From: Hypanus sabinus
Lineage: Eukaryota
Length of the DNA stretch: 64,000 nt
Direction: 5' to 3'
Assembly: GCF_030144855.1 (NCBI RefSeq)
Contig: NC_082715.1
Span: 131,440,001 to 131,504,000, forward strand
Positions 2,561-63,508 of the stretch are shown here, one piece after another (the first letter of the stretch is position 1; each line of letters starts with the position of its first letter). The translations under genes and the position numbers were made by a program. The notes below the pieces were generated by a model that was not told the DNA's origin, did no database searches, and was given only the letters and a program-made list of their open reading frames with translations.

Positions 2561-3204
2561 GGTCCCCACCAGCCACATCTTTTCGCAGACCTGAGCAGGA
2601 TAGTTAGATGGGGTATATGCTGCCACCAAGAAAAAAAAGCAGGCCAGCAAACATCAGCGCTTCTGTCTTATTTAATGCGTTTTGCTGCATTGAGCATCTT
2701 AACCTTGGCAATACCCGGGATGGCTCTCTGACCTGAGCTCCAGCCAAGAACCAAAGCCTGAACAGCCTTACTGGGCCATTGAACCTTCAGAGGGTTGATG
2801 TGTTCCTTTAACACACAGAGAGCCTCCAGCACCTTCTCCTTGCATGGCTCCCCCTTACTAACGTATCAGCAATGTAATGTCCACCCTGTGTGCTGTGCAA
2901 GAGACAGCATTGATCCTGGCCCTGAACCACCAAAGGGCGACGCGAGCTCGGGCTGCGAACGTACCCGTGGGAAGCGCGTACCGCCTTCCCCACCAGTCCT
3001 GTCAGCGGACATCCAGCGGGATTGAGAAGAAGGCATTAGACAGGTCAATCACAGCATAGCACTCGTCTCCACCAGGGTAATGACTGTGGCTAAGGTCAGT
3101 GTGTGCTTGTTTAACTGTTGATCATCATGCTCCAACTCCCATCTGATTTCTTCACTGGCCAGACAGGACTGTTGCACTGTGGTGTGGCTGGTCTTACCAA
3201 GCAG

Positions 3205-3460
3205 TGCCGTTCCCATTCCCTGAGGGTCTCCGGAATTTCTTTGTGCCCCCCTCGGATTCTATACCAGAGGGTGCAGCCTCAGAGGGACATCCCTTTAGAA
3301 CGGAGATTCTGAGAATTCTTTGTCAGAAGGTGCTGAATCTGTGGAATTCATTGCCACGGACGGCCGTGGAGGCCAAGCCATTGAGTATATTTAAAGCAAA
3401 GATTGATGTTCCTAATTAGTCAGTGGGTCAAAGGTTACAAGGAGAAGGCAGAATAATGGA
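3205..3460 (+). mobile_element. CR1 LINE 3' fragment
   Basis: VLNLWNSLPRTAVEA, the CR1 ORF2 C-terminal motif. Confidence 0.75.
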
Positions 3461-4405
3461 GCCCCTCTGACCCTCAACACAGGTGCCCCTCAGGGTTGTG
3501 TACTAAACCCCCTCCTTTACTCTCTGTATACCCATGACTGTGTTGCCACCCACAGCTCCAATCTGCTAATTAAATTTGCTGATGACACTACATTGATTGG
3601 CCTAATCTCAAATAATAACGAGGCAGCTGCAGAGAAGTCACCACCCTGACACAGTGGTGTCAAGAAAACAATCTCTCCCTCAATGTCGCAAAAACAAAGG
3701 AGCTGGTTGTGGATTACAGGAGGAATGAAGGCAGGCTAGCCCCTATTAACATCAATGGATTGGGGTTGAGAGGCTGAACAGCTTTTAGTTCCTCAGCATA
3801 AACATCACTGAGGATTTCAAATGCTCTGTACATACCGGCTGTGTGTGAAAAAGGCACAACAGCGCCTCTTTCAACTCAGACAGTTGAAGAAGTTTGGTGT
3901 GGGCCCTCAAATCCTAAGAACTTCCTATAGGGGCACAATTGAGAGCATCCTGACTGGCTGCATCACTGCCTGGTATGGGAACTGAACCTCCCTCGATCGC
4001 AGGACTCTGCAGAGAGTGGTGCAGACAGCCCAGCGCATCTGTAGGTGTGAATTTCCCACTATTCAGGACACTTACAAAGACAAGTGTGTTAAAAGGCTTG
4101 AAGTTTCACTGGGGACCTGAGTCACCCCAACCACCAACTGTTCCAGCTGCTACCATCCAGGAAACGGTACTGCAGCGTAAAAGCCAGGACCAACAGGCTC
4201 CGGGACAGCTTCTTCCACCAGGCCATCAGACTGATTAATTCATGCTGTTATAATTGTATTTCTATGCTATATTGACCATCCTGTTGTACATGCTATTTAT
4301 TATAAGTTACTATAAATGGTACATTTAGACGGAAATGTAATGTGAAGATTTTTACTCCTCATGTATATGAAGGACATAAGTAATAAAGTCAATTCAATTC
4401 AATTC
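3460..4405 (+). mobile_element. Rex1/Babar-type LINE fragment
   Basis: RT motifs TGAPQGCVL and IKFADDT; (CAATT)n tail at ~4390-4405. Confidence 0.8.
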
Positions 4406-5679
4406 ATTTCATGTACTCAGCCTAAAAAAAAACAATCTTCACATTAGACATGCTGAAAATGATCTCCCCTTCAGCACAATCACTTCATTCCTGTATTGTG
4501 GCCAGACCTGCAAAAGATATTGAGGCTGTGGTCTAACTAGCGTTGTTTACTATTGTGGTGGTTGAAAATACCTTCCAGCAGCCTAGACCTTCTTTCTCAC
4601 ACACTTATCTGTTTTGGTGTCATTGGAAAACATCTTATTGGCAGATCCTCCATGTATCCGATAGAACGTTAAATACTGTATAAGGACCCAAATGTAGAGC
4701 CTTGATAAATCTGACCACATATACCCTCTGGACTCCAACACTATCATCTACGATTCCCCTTTGCCTTCACCCACAGAGCCATATTTAAACCGACATCACT
4801 TCCCTGGGTTTCATTTTACTTATCTGCTACATAGGACTTGGACGATCAAAAATCTTGCTTAAAATCCATATACCATCCGCGTCATTACTCCTTGCTGCCA
4901 GCTGGAGCCAGGATATAGAATTTAGTGCAGAAAACACATAGAATTCTCGCAAGTCAGGCAACATCTTTAAGTGCCTTGAAGATGGCCCTGTCATTAAAAT
5001 CAGTCATCATTCAGGCCAATTGGAAGCCATGGCCGATGGCCAAGGTGCTGAAAGAATGGAATGCCGCTTTCAATTCTGTGGATAAGTTGGCTGTCAGGTG
5101 AGGGAGAGCTGTGCCTTCATATGCCATCAGGAAAGCAAAACACAGAGAATCTACAGCATTTCTGTGACACCAGGGGCACACGGTGAATGTGGTAGGGTAC
5201 TCAGACCATAATGGACTACAGGATCATTTTGCGTGTAATGACTGAAGACCCAGTTAAGCTGCCGGGTCTGACAACATTTCTGGTTGGGTTCTCAGTGACT
5301 GCACGGCCCTGCTAGCAGATGTTCTCAGGGAGATCTTTAACATCTCTGGGACAGTCCGTTGTCTCCTCAGGCTTCATGACCACCACCATCATCCTGCCCA
5401 AGAGACTGACAGTAACCCACCTTAATGACTACCGTCCAGTGGCACTGACCTCAAGAATAATGACGTGCTTTGAGCAGCAGTTCATGAACTGCATCAAATC
5501 CAGCCTTCTCACTACATTGTACCCCTATCAGTTTGCACATCACCCAAATTGCTCCACCAATGATGCAACAGCCTCTGGCATCTACTCAGTCCTGTCCAAC
5601 TGGAGAATGGTGTCTCCTATGTCAGAATGCAGTCCATCGACTTCAGTTTGGTGTCCATTATGATAGTTCCTTAGACGCC

Positions 5680-6290
5680 TGTCATAGACTCATGGAAACA
5701 GGCCTTTCGGCTCATGTGGTCTGTGGCGGACTAGTCCCACGCACCGGCATCGCGATCACAGCCCCTCCACGCCTCTCATCCAGGCACCCATCTCATTCCT
5801 CTCAAATTGAACCACTTCCACAGGCAGCTCGTTCCACACTTCCACCACCTTCTCAGTGAAGAAGACCCCCCTCAGATTCTCCTTAAATATTCCACCTTTC
5901 ATCCTGTACCTGTGAACGATAGTCCTAGTCTCATCCAATGTCAGGGGTTTTTGCAAGCATTTTCCCTATCTATACCCCTCATAATTTTGCTCTATAAGAT
6001 CACACTCATTCTCCTACACTCCAGTAAATAACATCTGAATCTAGTTTACCTTTCACTATAACTCAGACCCTCAAGTCCCAATAATATCCTTGTAAATTTT
6101 CGCTGCACCCTTTCAAACTTATTGATATCTATCTTACAGGTAAGTGACCACAACTGCCCACAGTACTCCAAACTTGGCCTCACCAATGTCTTATAAAACT
6201 TCAGCTTAAGATCCCAGTGGCTATACTCAATTCTTTGATTCATGGAGGTCAAAGTGCCAAAAGCCGTCTTCATGATCCTTTCTACCTGTC
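5680..6290 (-). mobile_element. CR1 LINE 3' portion
   Basis: LVRPSLEYC...ERVQRKFTR and FFTEKVVEVWNELP on the minus strand. Confidence 0.85.
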
Positions 6291-6725
6291 CAACCTTTCT
6301 ACTAACGCCTGCCTCAGTAGCTGGATCTTGATGGAGTGGCTGGGGACGGTCTGTGTCGCAGCAACATCTCTAGCACCGCCACGGTGAGTCCCAGCACTCC
6401 CCAGAACGGTTCGCACTGCTGATGTGTGACTGTACTGCCGGATCCATTAATTTCGCTGATGGCAGAACAGTGCTTGGCCCCATCAGCTATAACGATGAGG
6501 TGGCACACCGAGAGGAGGTAGAGCGGGTTGTGGACTGCTGGGAAAAAAAACAACTTGAGTCTCAGTGCGGGCAAAACTGAAGAGATGTCTGTGCACTTCG
6601 GGAATGAGCAGGGCGACCACTCCCGACTGTACATCGATGACTCCTCTGTGGAGAGAGTCAGGAATGCGCCTCACTGACGATCTCACCCGGTCCCTCAACA
6701 CCACCTCTTTAGTCAAGAAAGCACA

Positions 6726-7036
6726 AAACCTTCAATTCGCTATTTAAGCTCAGATGTTGGCTATTATTAATTTTTATTATATAAGAAGGTATCTACCTTC
6801 TTTTCTCCTTAATGAACAGCTTCGGTCTTGGTGGGGGTTAGATTCTTTTTTTCTTTTGTAATAAATTAGTGTAGTTCAATATAACTATTGATTAACTTAT
6901 ATGAATACGGGGTAATGTAATTGTTATTATGAATAGATATAATGTGACTGGTAGTTTTAAAAAATCTTTTCTGACCTTTTATATACACTTTCTTGTACTC
7001 TGTATTCTTCTATGTAGAAACTAATAAAATATTGGA
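6726..7036 (+). mobile_element. 5'-truncated L1-type 3' end with TSD
   Basis: AT-rich 3'UTR-like insert ending AATAAAATATTGG, flanked by AAGAAAGCACA (6715-6725) and AAGAAAGCGCA (7037-7047). The host LINE continues on both sides. Confidence 0.6.
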
Positions 7037-35979: not shown

Positions 35980-36518
35980 ATAGTCACTGTATTGTCTTCT
36001 TTATAGCTGCATCGATATGTTGGGACCAGGTTAGATCCTCAGAGATCTTGACACCCAGGAACTTAAAATTGCTAACTCTGTCCATTTCTGTTCTCTCTAT
36101 GATGATTGCTTTGTGTTCCCTCATTTTACCCTTTCTAAAGTCCACAATCAGCTCTTTGGTTTTACTGACATTGAGCGCAAGGTTGTTGTCGCGATACCAC
36201 TCAAATGATTGTTCTATCTCGCTCCTGTACGCCCTCTCGTCTCCATATCAGATTCTGCCAACAATGGTTGTATCATCAGCAAATTTATAGATGGTATTTG
36301 AGCAATGTCTCGCCATACAGTCATGGGTATAGAGAGAAAAGAGCAGTGGCTAAGCACACACCCCTGAGGTTCGCCAGTGTTGATCGTCAACGAGGAGAAG
36401 ACATTATTACCAATCCACACAGATTATGGTCTTCCGGTTAGGAAGTTGAGGATCCAATCGCAGAGGGAGGAACAGAGGCCCAGATGCTCTAGATTATTGA
36501 TCAGAAATGTGGGAATGA

Positions 36519-36980
36519 TCAAAAGGTTCAAAGGTTCATTTATTATCAATGCATGTATCCATATACAACTCTGAAATCTGCCTTCTCCAGATAGCCTTGG
36601 AAGAACATAAAACTCATTCAGACCCACCACCCACCCTGCACACAAAAAGAACAGCATCCCGGTCTTCAACACCTCCTCCCCAAAACACACCTCTCTCCAC
36701 ACAAAACGGAACAGGAGCATCAACCCCTCTCCCGCACAAAAAACTAACAGAACATCAGACCCCAGGCACCCTCCCCGTGCAAAACAAAAAGGAAAAAGAA
36801 CAGACGATAAAAAAAGTATAAAAACCATGTCTGAGAAAAGTCCATAGTCCATAAGCACAATAGTCTAATCCATAAACGCAGAACCACAATACCATCCCCT
36901 GATATGACTGACATTCATCGAAAGAGAGGGACACCACATGAGGCAGCGAGGCCGACCCACCTACCACAGCGAGCCACACA
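36519..36980 (-). mobile_element. Non-autonomous retroposon with LINE-type 3' tail, related to 43613-44585
   Basis: Tail ttcaaaggttcatttattatc...tacaactctgaaatctgccttctccagatag and A/C-rich internal repeats (aacatcagacccc), all shared with 43613-44100. Confidence 0.6.
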
Positions 36981-38129
36981 GCAATGGTGTTAAACGTTGA
37001 GCTATAGTCAACGAATAGCACTACGACATAGGTGTTTGCATTTTCCAGGTGATCTAAGGCTACATGAAGAGCCATTGAGATTGGGGTTGCCGTTGACCTA
37101 TTTTGGCGATAGAAAAATTTCAGTGGGTCCAGGTCCTTGCTGAGGCAGGAGTTGATTCTAACCATGACCAATCACTCAAAGCGTTTCATCACCTTAGATA
37201 TGAGTGCTACTGGATGATAGTCATTAAGGCTACTCTTCTGAGGCACTGGTATAATTGTTGCCATTTTAAAGCAGGTGGGAACTTCTGACCATAGCAGTGA
37301 AAGGTTGAAAATATCCTTGAATACATCTGCCAGTTGTAGTCGACTTAAGTTTTCTGAGCTTTACCAGGTATCCTGCCACCTTGCGAAGGTTCAACTTCCT
37401 GAAAAGACAACCTGACATTGGCCTCCAAATCAGAGATGACAGGGTCACTGGATGCAGTAGGGATCTTCACAGCTCTCGTTCAAAGTGGGCATAAAAGGTG
37501 TTGGGCTCATCTGGTAATGAAGCATCACTGCCATTTATGCAATTAGGTTTAACTTTGTAGGAAGTAATGTCCTGCAAATCCTGCCAGCGTTGCAATGTCA
37601 CCTCCAACCTTTGCTTTTGAAATAGCCTCCGCAAGTCATACCTGGTTTTCTTGTGCAGACCTGGGTTGCCCGGGTTAAATGCCACAGATCTAGTCCTCAG
37701 CAGACGATGTACTTCATGGCTCATCCACAGCTCTTGGCTTGGGAACGTACAGCAAGTTTTCACAGGCACACACCCATCAGCAAACGGTTTGCATGAAGTC
37801 TGTAACAACTGCTGCATTCTCATTCAGAGTCGAAGATTATTCCCTGAATCGTCCCGACTCAAAGCAATCCTGTAATTACCAGGTTAGAGAAATCGATGCT
37901 CATGACATCAGTCTGGAGGCTAACTAGATGGAATATAAAGTGTTTGCTTCCCCAACTTGAGTTTGGCCTCATTGTGGAAGTAGAAGAGGCTACCCATGCC
38001 CTTCAGGGAAGAAATCTGCCATCTCTATCCCAGACTGTTTTCTCCGTAACTGCAGATCCACTTCATTTGGTAACCCAGTAATGTACACTACTTGTGGGTG
38101 GAGCAAAGTAATATCGCAACCAATGCTTC

Positions 38130-57750: not shown

Positions 57751-58244
57751 CTGTATGTGTGTTCATTATAGAAAGCCAGCATGAATTTGTTGAAAGAGAT
57801 CATATCTAACCTTGATACAATTTTCTGATGAAGATGACAAATAGGATTGATAAGGAATATGCATTTGATTGATTTTTTGTTAGCCATTTTTGGAATGGAG
57901 GCACCATTGGCAAGGCATGCATTTGTACTGATCTCCAATTGCCCCTGAGTAATGGTGGACTGTCATGTTGAACATTCTACAGTTTATCTGGTGAAGATAC
58001 TCCCACAGTGCAGTTGGAAGGGAGTTCCAGGATTTATACCCAGCAATAATGAAGGACCATTGAAATATTTGAAATTCATAATAGAGTGCAACTTGGGTAG
58101 GAAAGTTGCAGGTATTAATGTTATGAGGCCTTTGGTACCTTGTTGGGCTGGTACTTTGTGTGAATGGGATGAGTACCTGCAAGATATTTTGTGCACGGTA
58201 CTCACTGCAGCCACTGTGATGGTGGAAGGAATGAATGTTTAGAA

Positions 58245-58325
58245 CAGGGTTTCCCAACCTGTGGTCCACAGACCGCTCGGATAATGGTAGGGGTCCATGA
58301 CATAAAAAAAGGTTGAGAGCTCCTG
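58245..58325. mobile_element. hAT/Charlie-type MITE, 81 bp
   Basis: CAGGGTTTCCCAACCT...AGGTTGAGAGCTCCTG TIRs; 8-bp TSD GTTTAGAA/ATTTAGAA. Related copies at ~62776-62850 (inverted) and ~14364-14415. Confidence 0.7.
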
Positions 58326-59188
58326 ATTTAGAATCTAAATAGGATTCCAATCAAGCAGGCTATTTTGTCCTAGGTGGTGTCAAGCTTTTTGAGAGTGGGT
58401 GTAATTGCAATGGTCAAGACAAGTAGAAATAATTCCATCAGGCTTAAATGTCTTGAAGATGATAAAAAGCCTTCGAGCTATCAGTCTGTTAGTCACTGGC
58501 CACAAGATACTCAGCCTCTGATCTGCTCTCCCAGCACAGATTTTAAATGGCTTTCTGTTAATGGAAACAACTTAAAACACTGATGTAAGGTGAGATAGGG
58601 CCAATGAATACCTTGGTGTGGGTGGTTAGACTCACTTGATGCAGATCATTATCTGGCTTCTTTTGCATTGTGAATATTCTTTGCCACTCATTAGCATAAG
58701 TCTGAATACTCTCTAGATCTTGCTGCATGAAAGCTTAAAGTACTTAATTTGCTGTGAAACTGGAAATGACATTGATCAGTGATGATTGCACAAGCATTAT
58801 CAATGACTTTCAAGATGCCAGTGCATAGGACATTGCCCAGGTGTCCTGGAGCTGGGACAATTGACCTCTCATGACCACAAACAACTTTGTTGATGCACTC
58901 AAAGTGCAATGGAATGAAGAATTTATTTTTTTTGTAATTTTTTTTATTGAAGTTCATCATCAAACAAACATTTCCATGAGATGTGTTTCAGACATTGTAC
59001 ATATATATCATATATCATATATATCACAAATCTCCACAAAGTATTTATTTGAGGTACACACTTATAGAAAAGAGTGGAGAGAAAAAACAAGCAAAAGGGA
59101 AGAACTATGTACAAGTAGGGAGTGATCTTTTGTTTTTATAACATACTCATTGATTTGTGAGAATAAAGTCATGCCTATGAGGCATTAT

Positions 59189-59314
59189 TTAGTTCAACCA
59201 TTTTTCCCAGTATGAATCAAATTGTTCCAAATTGGATAAAATTCTCTTACGTTTGATTGGATTTAATAGCCCATTGACATTAAAAGAAATTAATTTTACC
59301 TTGTCCTTAGCCAT
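59189..59314 (-). pseudogene. Collapsed L1 ORF2 (41 aa, N-terminus fused to C-terminus)
   Basis: MAKDKVKLISFNVNGLLNPIKRKRILSN-LEQFDSYWEKWLN*. The APE endonuclease start motif (SFNVNGL) is joined in frame to the terminal F..YW..W motif of ORF2. Confidence 0.75.
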
Positions 59315-59629
59315 CTGTATTTATCTGTCAATGTACCATTGAAATTAGAATAAAACTTAATCAATCTACTCCCTGAACAAATGTGAACCGGGAAATGCAG
59401 ATAATAACAAAAATGGCAACGAACGTGTGATTCCCAGGCTGAGGTCACTAGTAGATGACCCTACGTTGAGCTAGAGGAAATGTCTAGCTGTGGGGGATAA
59501 CCCCTTCCTACTTGTGAGTTGAGGGCCCCAAATGCAGTATTCATAAAAGTCAGTGAACAAATCCATTATGCAGAAAAGATTTCCCTGTGTACTCCTCCTA
59601 TATATACACACACACATATACATATACAC

Positions 59630-60291
59630 TGTAGTGTTCTCGCTCAGGTGTAAGAGAACTCTGAACTAAACACCGAGGTAAACCGTAGTCAATGAAAACA
59701 GGATTGCAGTAAGATTAACCGTTTACTGTTCACTCTTCCACATTAACGTATGGTGAAAACTGTTGATAAAACAATACAAAATGTATACAGTATTTGTTTC
59801 CTTCTTGATATCACATTTACATTGTAAATACTTGCAAAAGTAAAACTACAACTACATTACATTAAAGTGCAGCATACAGTCAGAATCTACCTACACCATT
59901 GACTGCTTTAAATACACTTCAACACAAGCTATCCGCAACTCTTTAACTAACGAAAATATAAACCTTATCAACCGTCATTACTTTTAACAGAATCAGCATT
60001 AACATTTTTAATTCAACACATCGATTATCTCACTAACTTACGGCGTTGCTTCACTGATGTTTCTAGTGCGTAGAAAGAAAACTTTTCTTGCGCCGATCCT
60101 GCACATGTGAGCCCCCTTCTTCCCGTTTCTCCAAACCGGTATTTTCCCACAAGACGGGTGTGATGTCATCGCATGCCGCGATATATCATAGACAACGAAT
60201 TTACTTTAATCAATCTTAACTTTAACTAGAAAATGCTAACAAATGAATTACTAAAGCGAAAATATTATAAACTAAACAAATGCCATATACA
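59630..60291 (-). mobile_element. Probable solo LTR of a second family, inserted in the L1 inter-ORF spacer
   Basis: TGTA...TACA termini, ~660 bp non-coding with retained CpGs. Sits in a (CA/TA)n tract; the TSD is ambiguous (CAC/ACAC). Confidence 0.6.
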
Positions 60292-60474
60292 CACATTACA
60301 TTCATATATGTATATTCATTCTCATTTTGGTGGGGAAAAAGGAGTAAGTGAGCGAATAAAGAATAACTACTAATTAATATAAAATCCACATTATAAGTAT
60401 TTCTTGAGATAGGTATATCACCGTGTACTTTTGCTTTAATTTAGCTTCTCAACATTTTAAAAGTTAGCCAAACC

Positions 60475-61482
60475 TTATGGCTCTTCTGAAGGGGGTGAGG
60501 ACTGTCTTTGGGAAACTCCTGGTCTCTTCCTGATATATTTCTCTCGGCCTCCTCCCGTCTCCTGCCTTCTCGATTCTCGCACTATTTCCCAAGCAGAGCG
60601 GGACAGTTCCTCAGTCAGACTTTCCCTCATTTTGGTGACACTGACGGGCAAACCTCTGGCCTTCAAGTCTGTAGTTGCCTCTTCCACCGTCTGGTACAAC
60701 TGTGTCCTGTTGTCATAAAACACTCGAAGTTTAGCAGGGTACAGAGTTTGAAATCTAATCGTATTTTGCTTTAGTACTCGCTTTACTTCAGAGTATTCTT
60801 TGCATTTCTGCAGGACCACGGGGGGGGGGGGGTAATCTTGGTCGAAATATATTAATTTATCATCGAAAAACACTCTCTTCTTACCCCAGGCCCTTTGTAG
60901 AATCTGCGACTTGGTGCTGTACCGAAGGAATTTAATTATTATAGAGCATGGCTTTCTGTCCTGGGTAGGTTTTGGAACCAGCGCGCGGTGCGTCCTCTCG
61001 ATTTCCAGCTCCATAGTTGAGGGAAGATCCAGCGCATCCCGCAGTAACTTTTCGACAAACTCAGTCATAGATGAGCCCTCCGCTCCTTCGGAAACGTTGT
61101 AGATTCTGATATTTTTCCGCCGTGATCGTCCCTCCAGATCAAGCAGTTCACCTTCTTGGTGATGTATTATTTTTATTGTCTTGCTCAGTATCTGTTCCAC
61201 GTTTTGAACGCGATCTTCCACCTTCTCAATTCGAGTCTCTGCCACTGCTATTTTTTGATTAATGCTGGCAAGCTCTGCCTTAATATCCCAGAGCTGCTGC
61301 TTTATTTCTTTCTGGACCTCCATTATCTCTTTCAGGATTTCGAACATATTTGCCGCTTTGACTGAACGAGGCCCAGCAGCCGCCTCGCTAGCACGCGGTC
61401 GGGTTGGAGAGCCGCTCGCTGCACTCCTCTCGGACCCAGGCTCCGCAGTGTCACTTTTTAAATTTCTGTTCCTTTTCCCCAT
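60475..61482 (-). CDS. L1 ORF1p-like protein (coiled coil, RRM, CTD), 335 aa
   Basis: Heptad region followed by LEGRSRRKNIRIYNVSEG, IERTHR, IIIKFLRY, IYFDQDY and LYPAKLRV, all L1 ORF1p hallmarks. No stops. Confidence 0.88.
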   Translation of the reverse strand: MGKRNRNLKSDTAEPGSERSAASGSPTRPRASEAAAGPRSVKAANMFEILKEIMEVQKEIKQQLWDIKAELASINQKIAVAETRIEKVEDRVQNVEQILSKTIKIIHHQEGELLDLEGRSRRKNIRIYNVSEGAEGSSMTEFVEKLLRDALDLPSTMELEIERTHRALVPKPTQDRKPCSIIIKFLRYSTKSQILQRAWGKKRVFFDDKLIYFDQDYPPPPVVLQKCKEYSEVKRVLKQNTIRFQTLYPAKLRVFYDNRTQLYQTVEEATTDLKARGLPVSVTKMRESLTEELSRSAWEIVRESRRQETGGGREKYIRKRPGVSQRQSSPPSEEP

Positions 61483-63508
61483 TCTTGCCCCTCTTTTCAG
61501 TTCAAATATTTTTCAAAAAGTATTATATTTGATGGAATAACGGGGCTTAATACGCGCTTTTCCAGAGGAGCTAGTGCCTTAAGCTGCCATTCTCGACGAT
61601 TATGACACCGGAACCGGAATGAAGAACTTAATGTGAGAGGGAACTGGAAGAGAACAAAGGGAAGGTCTGTGATAGGGTGGAGGCTAAGATCATCCACTAA
61701 TCTTGTTTGTGGTGTCTAAGAGACTGATGAATGCTTTATTAATTTTGACTGATTTATCTGCAAATATAAGTTGGGGCTAGAGTAGTAAGAAAACAATGCT
61801 GGAACTGAGAGATGCAGAACACCACAGTTGCAGAAGATCTGAAATGAAAGAGTATGCTGAAAACAGTCAACAGATCAGTAGTCTCAACTGGAGAGAAATG
61901 AGTTAATGTTACAGATGCATAATCTTGCATGAGAATAGCCAGTCTCACAAAAAGAGAAAAGCTGCTTCTCTGAAACTGTTAGATTCAATATTGAAACCTG
62001 AGAGCTGCCACTCGATTTGACAGCAGATGAGGTGCTAATTCTCATACTTACATTGAGCTTCATTGGAGGAGTGTTGGATGCTAAAAATAGAGAAGTCATA
62101 GAGGGAGTTAGAGAAGAATTAAAAGGACAGGCAATTGGAATTTCAGGATCAGCATTGTGTATTGAATAAGGACATGCTGCAGAGCTGTTAACTCACCTGC
62201 ATTAGGTTTCTCTGCAGGAGGGGAGACCACTAGCGAGCACCCAAGGTGGAAGAACAGGGAGTGATTTATCACTAAACCGAGGTGGCCTATTTGGGTCTGT
62301 TGTTTGTGGGAAGAGATGAGATAAAAAGATAGGTATTGCGTCTGCTGCAATTGTTCATTTAGCAGCAAACCAATCTATTTTACTAACCGCACCTTGATTC
62401 CACATGTTGCACTTGTTGTCGGTAGTCCATTATAAGGGCTCCTTTTCAATTATTTTCAGAAATGTTAATACTTTACCTGCACTTTATTACTCTCTACAAA
62501 GAATTCATTGCTTGCTAGGTATGATTTCCTGTTAGAAATCCATACTGACTAAATTTTAATGTATTGTTAGTAAACACTCTTCTATAAAGATACCTTTCTT
62601 GCAACAGATTTTGCTAGTTTGTCTAGAGTTCTGCCTTCTTCTTTAAAGAAGAACTAAAAATGTTCTGCCTTCTTCTTTAAAGACTTCGATAACCCGTTTG
62701 GAAGTCCTCAGAGAAAGATAAGTTTCTCATGAATGAAAAATACTGCCTTTGCTGTTCCTTTACTCATTTTACTTCAAGGGTCCCCAACCTTTTTTATGTC
62801 ATGGACCCGCTACCATTAACTGAAGGGACAACGGACCCAAGGTTGGGAACGATTTGGGATGCAATCTTCTCCCTAAATTTGATAAAAAATTATTAATTAA
62901 ATTTCCCCTCCACTTTTTATCTTAAATGTCTTCATAGATTTCGAGACTTTTCCCTAATGTATTAATTCCATTAACTACTTATGTAAAAACATTATTATGT
63001 TTCTACCAAACTCAGTGAAGTCTTGCACATCTCTTGATAGTCATATCACAAAACTAATTTTCTCTGTTACTTATTTTTCAGTGAGGCACGCCTTAATATT
63101 ATGTCATTAAAACCCCATTAGGAGAGTGATATCAGATCCATTTTGAAACAATGTATACCTACATTTAGGACCATGGATGCTGATGGTGCCAAAAACACTG
63201 TTTCCAATTAAAATATGACATTATACTGAAAGTAGTTCTCTGTTTAAAAAAAATTCAGACAAAACCACGGAGTGATATCTGTTTGTTGTGATGTAACTGT
63301 AAGATGAAAAATGCAGTACTTAGCTTTGTAACTCATCTTCTTCAAATTATAAGCTAACAGCAATTTTGAATCAGAAATTACCAAGGTATTATATTTCTGC
63401 TCCTAGTATGCCGACCTTCATGGTGGATGTCGAGCAATGCACTTAAGATTAAAAAAATATGTATACATAGATTCTCTAGCATAGAACAATTATCAGGGAG
63501 CCCAAGTA

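What the first reader, a model, noticed from the sequence alone, without database searches (positions are those of the whole stretch)
58911..61626. Complete TSD-flanked L1 with intact ORF1 and ORF2 collapsed to an in-frame 41-codon minigene (HAL1-like non-autonomous L1)
Seen: an 11-bp TSD (GGAATGAAGAA), a 5'UTR, an open 335-aa ORF1, and an ORF2 ATG at 59314. The first ~27 codons (endonuclease motif SFNVNGL) join in frame to the extreme ORF2 C-terminus (LEQFDSYWEKW), followed by 3'UTR and A-tail. The element is ~2.0 kb once the nested LTR is removed. Known: L1 ORF2 is normally about 1250 aa, and ORF1-only HAL1 elements have been described mainly in mammals. Inference: this may be a non-autonomous L1 lineage that keeps ORF1p, stays translatable across a mini-ORF2 and borrows ORF2p in trans. 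It could instead be a one-off post-insertion deletion.
Basis: partly seen in the sequence, partly recalled or inferred. Interest (0 to 1): 0.72.

Follow-up and report, generated by a model that had tools for sequence, protein, structure and literature searches.

The report
Stingray L1 copy lacking nearly all ORF2
This is a young, complete-ended copy of a stingray L1 jumping gene that keeps its first gene but has lost 96% of its copying-enzyme gene; it resembles the "half-L1" parasites of L1 known from mammals, but I could not test whether it belongs to a spreading family.

Summary
The anatomy is real. On the minus strand, an 11-bp target-site duplication occurs only twice in the window and brackets a 2.7-kb L1-clade element. 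Its 5' end matches a related full-length fish L1 from its first base. ORF1 is open (335 aa, L1 ORF1p type). A 290-bp conserved block lies upstream of ORF2, followed by the ORF2 ATG and an A-rich tail.

ORF2 is reduced to residues 1-27 joined in frame to its last 28 residues; about 1,212 codons are missing. The "41-codon minigene" is really a 55-codon relic with a premature stop at codon 42.

The "nested LTR" is not supported. About 0.68 kb of the inter-ORF spacer is extra compared with relatives, has no LTR hallmarks and is of unknown origin.

CpG content shows a young copy.

The key question is whether other copies share this junction.

First readers of this scan noted similar ORF1-only L1s on other pieces of this genome. 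Two have a 55-codon fusion and one carries a 3' transduction. These notes are unverified here.

Best reading (about 0.65): a HAL1-like copy made from an RNA that already lacked ORF2 and inserted by ORF2p supplied in trans.

The parts
61616..61626 (.). Target-site duplication, copy at the element's 5' side (GGAATGAAGAA on the + strand)
   Evidence: Exact 11-mer found only here and at 58911-58921 in the window; 0.11 matches expected by chance.
61483..61615 (-). 5'UTR, 133 nt, complete at its 5' end (starts GGTTCCGGTG)
   Evidence: Homology to the related full-length L1 L001 (1702-1752) begins at the first base after the duplication. CpG observed/expected is 1.06.
60475..61482 (-). ORF1, open, 335 aa, L1 ORF1p type (coiled coil, RRM, C-terminal domain). 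Contains a 13-nt C run (60820-60832) on which the open frame depends.
   Evidence: Human L1 ORF1p 2yko, E 6.9e-07, residues 72-260. Full-length coverage against 325-346-aa fish ORF1 proteins; 74-80% identity to stingray gene models. CpG observed/expected 0.79.
60296..60474 (-). Inter-ORF spacer, 5' part
   Evidence: Lies between the ORF1 stop and the extra segment; not alignable to L001.
59613..60284 (.). Approximate bounds, flanked by the low-complexity 11-mer ATATACACACA.
   Evidence: The spacer is 1160 bp here against 438 bp in L001. No LTR hallmarks, no Rfam or tRNA match, no ORF2-like coding remnant. CpG observed/expected 1.11.
59315..59612 (-). Conserved 3' part of the inter-ORF spacer, directly upstream of the ORF2 ATG; includes the invariant palindrome AGCTAGA-N7-TCTAGCT
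   Evidence: 69% identity over 283 bp to L001 2976-3246, E 2e-20; alignment. This matches the identity of the ORF1 coding DNA (67.6%).
59234..59314 (-). ORF2 codons 1-27 (MAKDKVKLISFNVNGLLNPIKRKRILS), the start of the endonuclease domain
   Evidence: Residues 6-31 align to human ORF2p residues 8-33; all six PDB hits are L1 ORF2p or its endonuclease. 65-77% identity to residues 1-31 of P0098-P0107.
59147..59233 (-). Last 28 codons of ORF2 plus the ancestral stop (NLEQFDSYWEKWLN*IMPHRHDFILTNQ*). Premature TAA at 59189-59191 (codon 42). Deletion junction between 59234 and 59233.
   Evidence: Translation. Matches the C-termini of P0078 (78%), P0100 and P0101 (67%) at residues 1241-1267.
58922..58947 (-). 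A-rich tail (AATAAAAAAAATTACAAAAAAAATAAA in element sense)
   Evidence: L001 ends in a similar AATAAA-rich tail.
58911..58921 (.). Target-site duplication, copy at the element's 3' side

Best explanation
This is a young retrotransposed copy of an L1-clade LINE in a stingray genome. It has the complete 5' end, an open ORF1, the native spacer upstream of ORF2, the native 3'UTR, an A-rich tail and an 11-bp target-site duplication. ORF2 consists only of its first 27 and last 28 codons, joined in frame; about 1,212 codons holding the endonuclease, reverse transcriptase and C-terminal domains are gone.

The deletion was most likely already in the RNA template. On that reading this is one of several ORF1-only, HAL1-like copies in this genome. 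The RNA could make ORF1p but had to be reverse-transcribed and inserted by ORF2p supplied in trans by a full-length L1 of the same lineage.

Shown: the anatomy, the simple two-breakpoint deletion, the complete 5' end and the youth of the copy. Inferred: that the deletion came before insertion, that the copy belongs to a family, and that it was mobilised in trans. This copy has since gained a stop at codon 42 of the 55-codon relic and carries about 0.68 kb of extra spacer.
For: - Target-site duplication: unique in the window and placed exactly at both ends.
- 5' end: homology to full-length L001 starts at the first base after the duplication.
- ORF1: full length and of L1 type.
- ORF2: relatives match only residues 1-31 and 1241-1267, with no other ORF2 remnant anywhere in the element.
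- Youth: CpG observed/expected is 0.79 in ORF1 and 1.06 in the 5'UTR. An intact relative gives 0.71 and 1.24, while the flanks give 0.09-0.17.
- Length of the relic: my own read-through gives 55 codons. Two first-reader notes on other pieces of this genome give the same number (s1-189587, s1-213586).
- Other copies: further notes describe other ORF1-only L1s and a 3' transduction by an ORF2-less L1.
- Other runs: 20 runs from 13 studies hold 9-45% of the stretch's 31-mers.
Against: - No second copy with this junction was seen by me.
- The notes on other copies are unchecked AI notes without sequence.
- No 55-aa fusion protein exists in the protein collections, though such short ORFs are rarely called.
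- A full-length partner was found only in other fish, not in this genome.
- The in-frame join has a 1 in 3 chance by itself, and the frame is broken in this copy.
Confidence: 0.65

Rival explanations
1. One-off deletion after insertion. A full-length L1 inserted here, and about 3.6 kb inside ORF2 was later lost by replication slippage or repair between short similar sequences. The element never propagated in this form.
For: Only one copy is visible in the window. Both breakpoints lie next to similar codons in relatives (ILS-K-M/V-KKEQ against NH-K/N-LEQF), which allows a microhomology-mediated deletion. An in-frame outcome has a 1 in 3 chance.
Against: Two unverified notes report a 55-codon in-frame ORF2 fusion at other loci of the same genome, matching the length I derived independently. 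The copy is young by CpG content, which leaves little time for a large deletion.
Confidence: 0.2
2. Recurrent by-product, not a lineage. Full-length L1 RNAs repeatedly lose ORF2 at the same places, by splicing (as in SpIREs) or by a reverse-transcriptase template jump. Each such RNA gives a dead-on-arrival copy. The copies share a junction without descending from one another.
For: A first-reader note raises a spliced RNA for a similar copy (s1-223269). Gene models in Mobula hypostoma join the ORF1 N-terminal half to pieces of ORF2 (P0075, P0078), which hints at splicing within such L1 RNAs. SpIREs are documented in human (PMC5860796).
Against: In the related full-length L1 L001, the N-side breakpoint is not followed by GT and the C-side has no pyrimidine tract, though L001 is only about 70% identical. 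A followed-up note reports a 3' transduction by an ORF2-less L1 (s1-193300). That implies an already deleted source locus was transcribed and copied.
Confidence: 0.12
3. Assembly artefact. The junction was created by a collapse of reads from a full-length L1.
For: The element contains a 13-nt homopolymer and microsatellite-like runs.
Against: The join is a clean in-frame link of two coding ends, with no other disturbance, inside an element with matching target-site duplications. Similar structures are noted at other loci.
Confidence: 0.03

Closest known systems
HAL1 (half-L1) elements of mammals (Smit 1999; Bao and Jurka 2010, as cited in PMC5753468 and PMC13756887)
   Same: Derived from L1. 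Keeps an ORF1 and lacks a working ORF2, so it must rely on ORF2p from autonomous L1s. HAL1s arose independently several times (PMC5753468).
   Different: This one is in a cartilaginous fish and derives from a fish-type L1 lineage. It keeps an in-frame stub of ORF2 (first 27 and last 28 codons), the conserved spacer upstream of ORF2 and the native 3'UTR. Copy number, selection on ORF1 and activity were not tested. The Bao and Jurka paper was not held, so details of HAL1 structure rest on my own knowledge.
Full-length fish L1 of the same lineage (L001 from a metagenome contig; ORF2 proteins P0099-P0109, e.g. Sparus aurata, Astyanax mexicanus)
   Same: Same 5' terminus (GGTTCCGGTG), ORF1 (54-61% aa identity), conserved block upstream of ORF2, ORF2 start and end, and A-rich tail.
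   Different: Those carry a 1264-1281-aa ORF2 and a spacer of about 440 bp. The window copy lacks about 1,212 ORF2 codons and has a 1160-bp spacer.
SpIREs, spliced integrated retrotransposed elements of human L1 (Larson et al. 2018, PMC5860796)
   Same: L1 copies with a target-site duplication and tail whose internal deletion was already in the RNA.
   Different: By my own knowledge, SpIRE junctions lie in the 5'UTR and ORF1 at GT..AG sites. Here the loss lies inside ORF2, and splice signals could not be checked in the true parent.
Internally deleted non-autonomous LINE derivatives such as RIME/ingi and NARTc/L1Tc of trypanosomes (own knowledge)
   Same: Both LINE ends are kept, the middle is deleted, and the parent's machinery does the mobilising.
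   Different: Those keep no complete ORF. Here a full ORF1 is kept.

Membership tests
L1-clade LINE | ORF1p with coiled coil, RRM and C-terminal domain (type II ORF1p) | tested here: met
   Residues 72-260 align to human L1 ORF1p 2yko/2ykp (E about 7e-07) and mouse ORF1 2ldy. 97 homologues were found, several named L1 RRM domain proteins. Pfam's own model did not report a hit.
L1-clade LINE | ORF2 with N-terminal APE-type endonuclease and reverse transcriptase | tested here: not met
   Only the first 27 and last 28 codons remain; no other ORF2 segment is present in the element. The stub matches the ORF2 N-terminus of L1. So this is a derivative, not an autonomous member.
L1-clade LINE | Insertion by target-primed reverse transcription: A-rich 3' tail and a target-site duplication of variable length | tested here: met
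   26-nt A-rich tail and an exact 11-bp duplication. The target site is not the mammalian TTTT/AA type.
HAL1-like (ORF1-only non-autonomous L1) | L1-derived, ORF1 open, ORF2 absent, both element ends kept | tested here: met
HAL1-like (ORF1-only non-autonomous L1) | Many copies share the same deletion but have different flanks and target-site duplications (a propagating family) | not testable with these tools
The only support is unverified notes of other copies.
HAL1-like (ORF1-only non-autonomous L1) | ORF1 kept under purifying selection across copies | not tested
   No DNA of sister copies was available. The open ORF1 here is explained by youth alone.
HAL1-like (ORF1-only non-autonomous L1) | An autonomous partner L1 with matching ends in the same genome | tested here: inconclusive
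   Full-length relatives exist in other fish. Ray gene models hold ORF2 pieces of this lineage (P0075, P0078). No full-length ray ORF2 turned up, and the source genome could not be searched.
SpIRE-type spliced L1 copy | Deletion bounded by GT..AG in the full-length parent | tested here: inconclusive
   Only the distant relative L001 could be inspected. It has no GT after the N-side breakpoint. The true parent is not available.

The most novel reading that the evidence does not exclude
The 55-codon mini-ORF2 is not an accident. It would be the selected core of a successful ORF1-only L1 family in stingrays, with on the order of a hundred or more copies. On this reading the family keeps the conserved spacer, the ORF2 start and the ORF2 end so that ribosomes still reinitiate and run to the 3' end of the RNA. 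There the RNA, coated by its own ORF1p, would capture ORF2p made by full-length L1s. This would be an independent, mechanistically informative reinvention of HAL1 outside mammals.
Probability: 0.15. Interest if true: 0.7.

Novelty: new member of a known kind. Interest (0 to 1): 0.42.

Why it matters
ORF1-only L1 parasites (HAL1) are described from mammals, where they arose several times. A comparable family in a cartilaginous fish, derived from a different L1 lineage, would show that this route to parasitising L1 is general among vertebrates.

Two features are retained here: an in-frame ORF2 stub, and an upstream spacer as conserved as coding sequence. If they recur across copies, they would give a natural experiment on which parts of an L1 RNA are needed in cis for ORF2 translation and for capture of ORF2p in trans.

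As a single copy it is an ordinary, well-preserved, deleted L1.

Tried and rejected
- Nested LTR: no TG..CA element with a 4-6-bp duplication stands out in 59300-60490.
- The 11-mer AGATTGATTAA (59357-59367 and 60206-60216) looked like the duplication of an 838-bp insert. It is rejected because L001 homology runs through its 3' copy for a further 200 bp or more.
- The other candidate, ATATACACACA flanking 59613-60284, is low-complexity and stays open.
- Rfam and tRNA scans of 58000-62500 found nothing.
- Pfam gave only coiled-coil noise for ORF1 and nothing for the mini-ORF.
- The word search with the 41-aa mini-ORF found no candidate.
- The whole-library search gave one hit, P0098, an ORF2 N-terminal fragment.
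- The N-terminal search with the L001 ORF2 gave 11 full-length fish ORF2s, none named as from a ray.
Those places were sent to no outside search afterwards. They were only part of local script comparisons of the whole element.
- The Bao and Jurka 2010 paper is not held.
- Folding of the conserved spacer gave z = -1.56, not significant, and covariation from two sequences is too thin.
- Findings look-ups by sequence and near this place were blank.
Full report
**Observation**

The element lies on the minus strand between 58911 and 61626.
- The 11-mer GGAATGAAGAA is found at 58911-58921 and 61616-61626 and nowhere else in the 64-kb window. Chance expectation is 0.11 matches, and none of 100 shuffles reached two.
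- Read in element sense, the order is: the duplication; a 133-nt 5'UTR; an open 335-codon ORF1 (60475-61482); a 1160-bp spacer; an ATG at 59314; a short ORF; about 200 nt of 3'UTR; a 26-nt A-rich tail; and the duplication again.
- ORF1 is by far the longest ORF in the window. No other part of the window resembles the element.

**What the parts are**

ORF1:
- It aligns to the solved human L1 ORF1p from the coiled coil through the RRM and C-terminal domain (2yko, E 6.9e-07) and to mouse ORF1.
- The word search gave 97 homologues. The nearest are gene models from stingrays and a devil ray (Hemitrygon akajei, Hypanus sabinus, Mobula hypostoma; 65-85% local identity). These are followed by many 325-346-aa L1 ORF1 proteins of teleosts at 55-61%.
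- In a multiple alignment the window protein is full length, while the four stingray models are truncated.
- Notes of this scan also call the genome a stingray.

Reference element:
- A metagenome contig (L001, 7.2 kb) carries a full-length relative. It has a 5' end near 1702, ORF1 at 1820-2743, a 438-bp spacer, a 1269-aa ORF2 at 3182-6991, and an AATAAA-rich tail.
- Ten further full-length ORF2 proteins of 1239-1281 aa came from the N-terminal search.

5' end:
- Homology between the window element and L001 begins at the first base after the target-site duplication (GGTTCCGGTG...). The copy is therefore not 5'-truncated.
- This lineage has a short 5'UTR of about 120-130 nt.

ORF2 remnant:
- Translation of 59140-59314 gives MAKDKVKLISFNVNGLLNPIKRKRILSNLEQFDSYWEKWLN*IMPHRHDFILTNQ*.
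- Residues 1-27 match the first residues of ORF2 in the relatives (MASDKVK.ISFNVNGLLNPIKRS.ILS...). Weakly, they also match human ORF2p residues 8-33; all six PDB hits are L1 ORF2p or its endonuclease.
- The rest matches the last 28 residues of ORF2 (...VNH[K/N]LEQF..W.KW.NY..P.RPDFI.TNQ in P0100, P0101 and the Mobula model P0078).
- tblastn with seven ORF2-bearing proteins hits the element only at residues 1-31 and 1241-1267. This is therefore a simple deletion of about 1,212 codons with the join between 59234 and 59233.
The ancestral relic had 55 codons and ended at the native ORF2 stop (59147-59149). In this copy the mini-ORF2 frame is therefore already broken.

**The spacer**

- The last roughly 290 bp before the ORF2 ATG are 69% identical to the L001 spacer (E 2e-20). 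That is as conserved as ORF1 coding DNA (67.6%). The block includes an invariant palindrome, AGCTAGA-N7-TCTAGCT.
- This disposes of the AGATTGATTAA pair as the duplication of an insert.
- Relative to L001, and to the 5.5-kb contigs that carry other full-length relatives, about 0.7 kb is extra. It lies roughly at 59613-60284 and is flanked by a low-complexity 11-mer.
- The extra segment has no LTR hallmarks, no RNA-family or tRNA match and no ORF2 remnant. Its CpG observed/expected ratio is 1.11.
- Whether it is a nested insertion or native to the stingray lineage is open. The label 'LTR' is unsupported.

**Age**

- CpG observed/expected is 1.06 in the 5'UTR and 0.79 in ORF1. The intact relative L001 gives 1.24 and 0.71.
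- The flanks give 0.09-0.17 and the whole window 0.32. The duplications are identical.
- The copy is therefore young, and that alone explains the open ORF1. The openness is not evidence of selection.
- It also depends on the exact length of a 13-nt C run (60820-60832). One stingray gene model (P0004) loses the frame exactly at that run.

**Family or one-off**

This is the crux, and I could not test it directly.
- The public collections on hand hold no stingray genome.

Indirect evidence:
1. First readers of this scan noted similar elements on other pieces of the same genome. Two have ORF2 'collapsed in frame to 55 aa' or to 'a ~55-codon N/C-terminal fusion' (s1-189587, s1-213586). Others are ORF1-only L1s (s1-188075, s1-188160, s1-223269). 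A followed-up note reports a 3' transduction by an ORF2-less L1 (s1-193300).
2. I reached 55 independently from the Mobula C-terminus, so the agreement in length is not trivial.
3. Twenty runs from 13 studies and about ten organism labels hold 9-45% of the stretch's 31-mers. That fits a repeat shared among related species, but it could not be localised.

All of these notes are unchecked leads. I put about 0.65 on a deletion that preceded insertion and recurs in the genome, 0.2 on a private deletion after insertion, 0.12 on recurrent splicing or template jumps without a lineage, and 0.03 on an artefact.

**Mechanism**

If the RNA already lacked ORF2, it encoded ORF1p only. It must then have been inserted by ORF2p from a full-length L1 of the same lineage, as proposed for mammalian HAL1 (PMC5753468, PMC4161310).

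In relatives, both breakpoints sit beside similar codons (ILS-K-M/V-KKEQ and NH-K/N-LEQF). This would allow a microhomology-mediated template jump or slippage. In L001 the N-side breakpoint is not followed by GT, which gives no support to splicing, but L001 is too distant to decide.

The idea that translation through the mini-ORF2 matters is untested. The in-frame join has a 1 in 3 chance, and all copies may descend from one event.

**Comparison and verdict**

- The closest known kind is HAL1. The structural criteria are met, but the family-level criteria (shared junction, selection on ORF1, a partner in the same genome) are untested.
- I found no report of ORF1-only L1 derivatives in fishes in the paper library. 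This is not proof of absence, and the key HAL1 paper was not held.
- I file this as a new member of a known kind, of moderate interest. Interest would rise if the junction proves to be shared by many copies.

Noticed in passing
window 59315-59612 (minus strand); L001 2930-3181: The roughly 290 nt upstream of the ORF2 ATG are as conserved between the stingray element and a distant fish L1 (69%) as ORF1 coding DNA (67.6%). They include an invariant 7-bp palindromic hairpin, AGCTAGA-N7-TCTAGCT. This may be a cis element for ORF2 translation or an internal promoter. A scan note (s1-181526) mentions promoter motifs in the L1 inter-ORF spacer of this genome.
   Followed up: partly
window 61606-61615 (minus strand); L001 1702-1720: The L1 5' terminus GGTTCCGGTG is identical in both elements. 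In L001 it is followed by a perfect CRE-like TGACGTCA, which in the window copy reads TGTCATAA. The 5'UTR of this lineage is only about 120-130 nt.
   Followed up: partly
window 60820-60832: A 13-nt homopolymer (G on the + strand) inside ORF1 encodes PPPP. The open frame depends on its exact length, and the Hemitrygon model P0004 loses the frame at this point. It is a likely frameshift or sequencing-error hotspot.
   Followed up: partly
proteins P0075 and P0078 (Mobula hypostoma LOC134350161, isoforms X2 and X1): These gene models join the N-terminal half of an L1 ORF1 (up to ...RRAWG) to an endonuclease piece or to the last 120 residues of ORF2. They reflect either spliced L1 transcripts or another internally deleted L1 locus.
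   Followed up: no
window 59613-60284: The extra spacer segment is CpG-rich for this genome (22 CpG, observed/expected 1.11). It contains a CRE-like GATGACATCAC and a GTAAGT donor-like site. Its origin is unknown.
   Followed up: partly
window 36029-37171 (minus strand): A reverse-transcriptase-like ORF remnant (FVDYSSTFNTI motif) with a weak tblastn match to L1 ORF2 residues 660-777. It probably belongs to another LINE clade.
   Followed up: no
L001 510-1607: Upstream of the L1 on the metagenome contig lies an endonuclease-type ORF of a different LINE. The contig is therefore fish host DNA in a metagenome.
   Followed up: no
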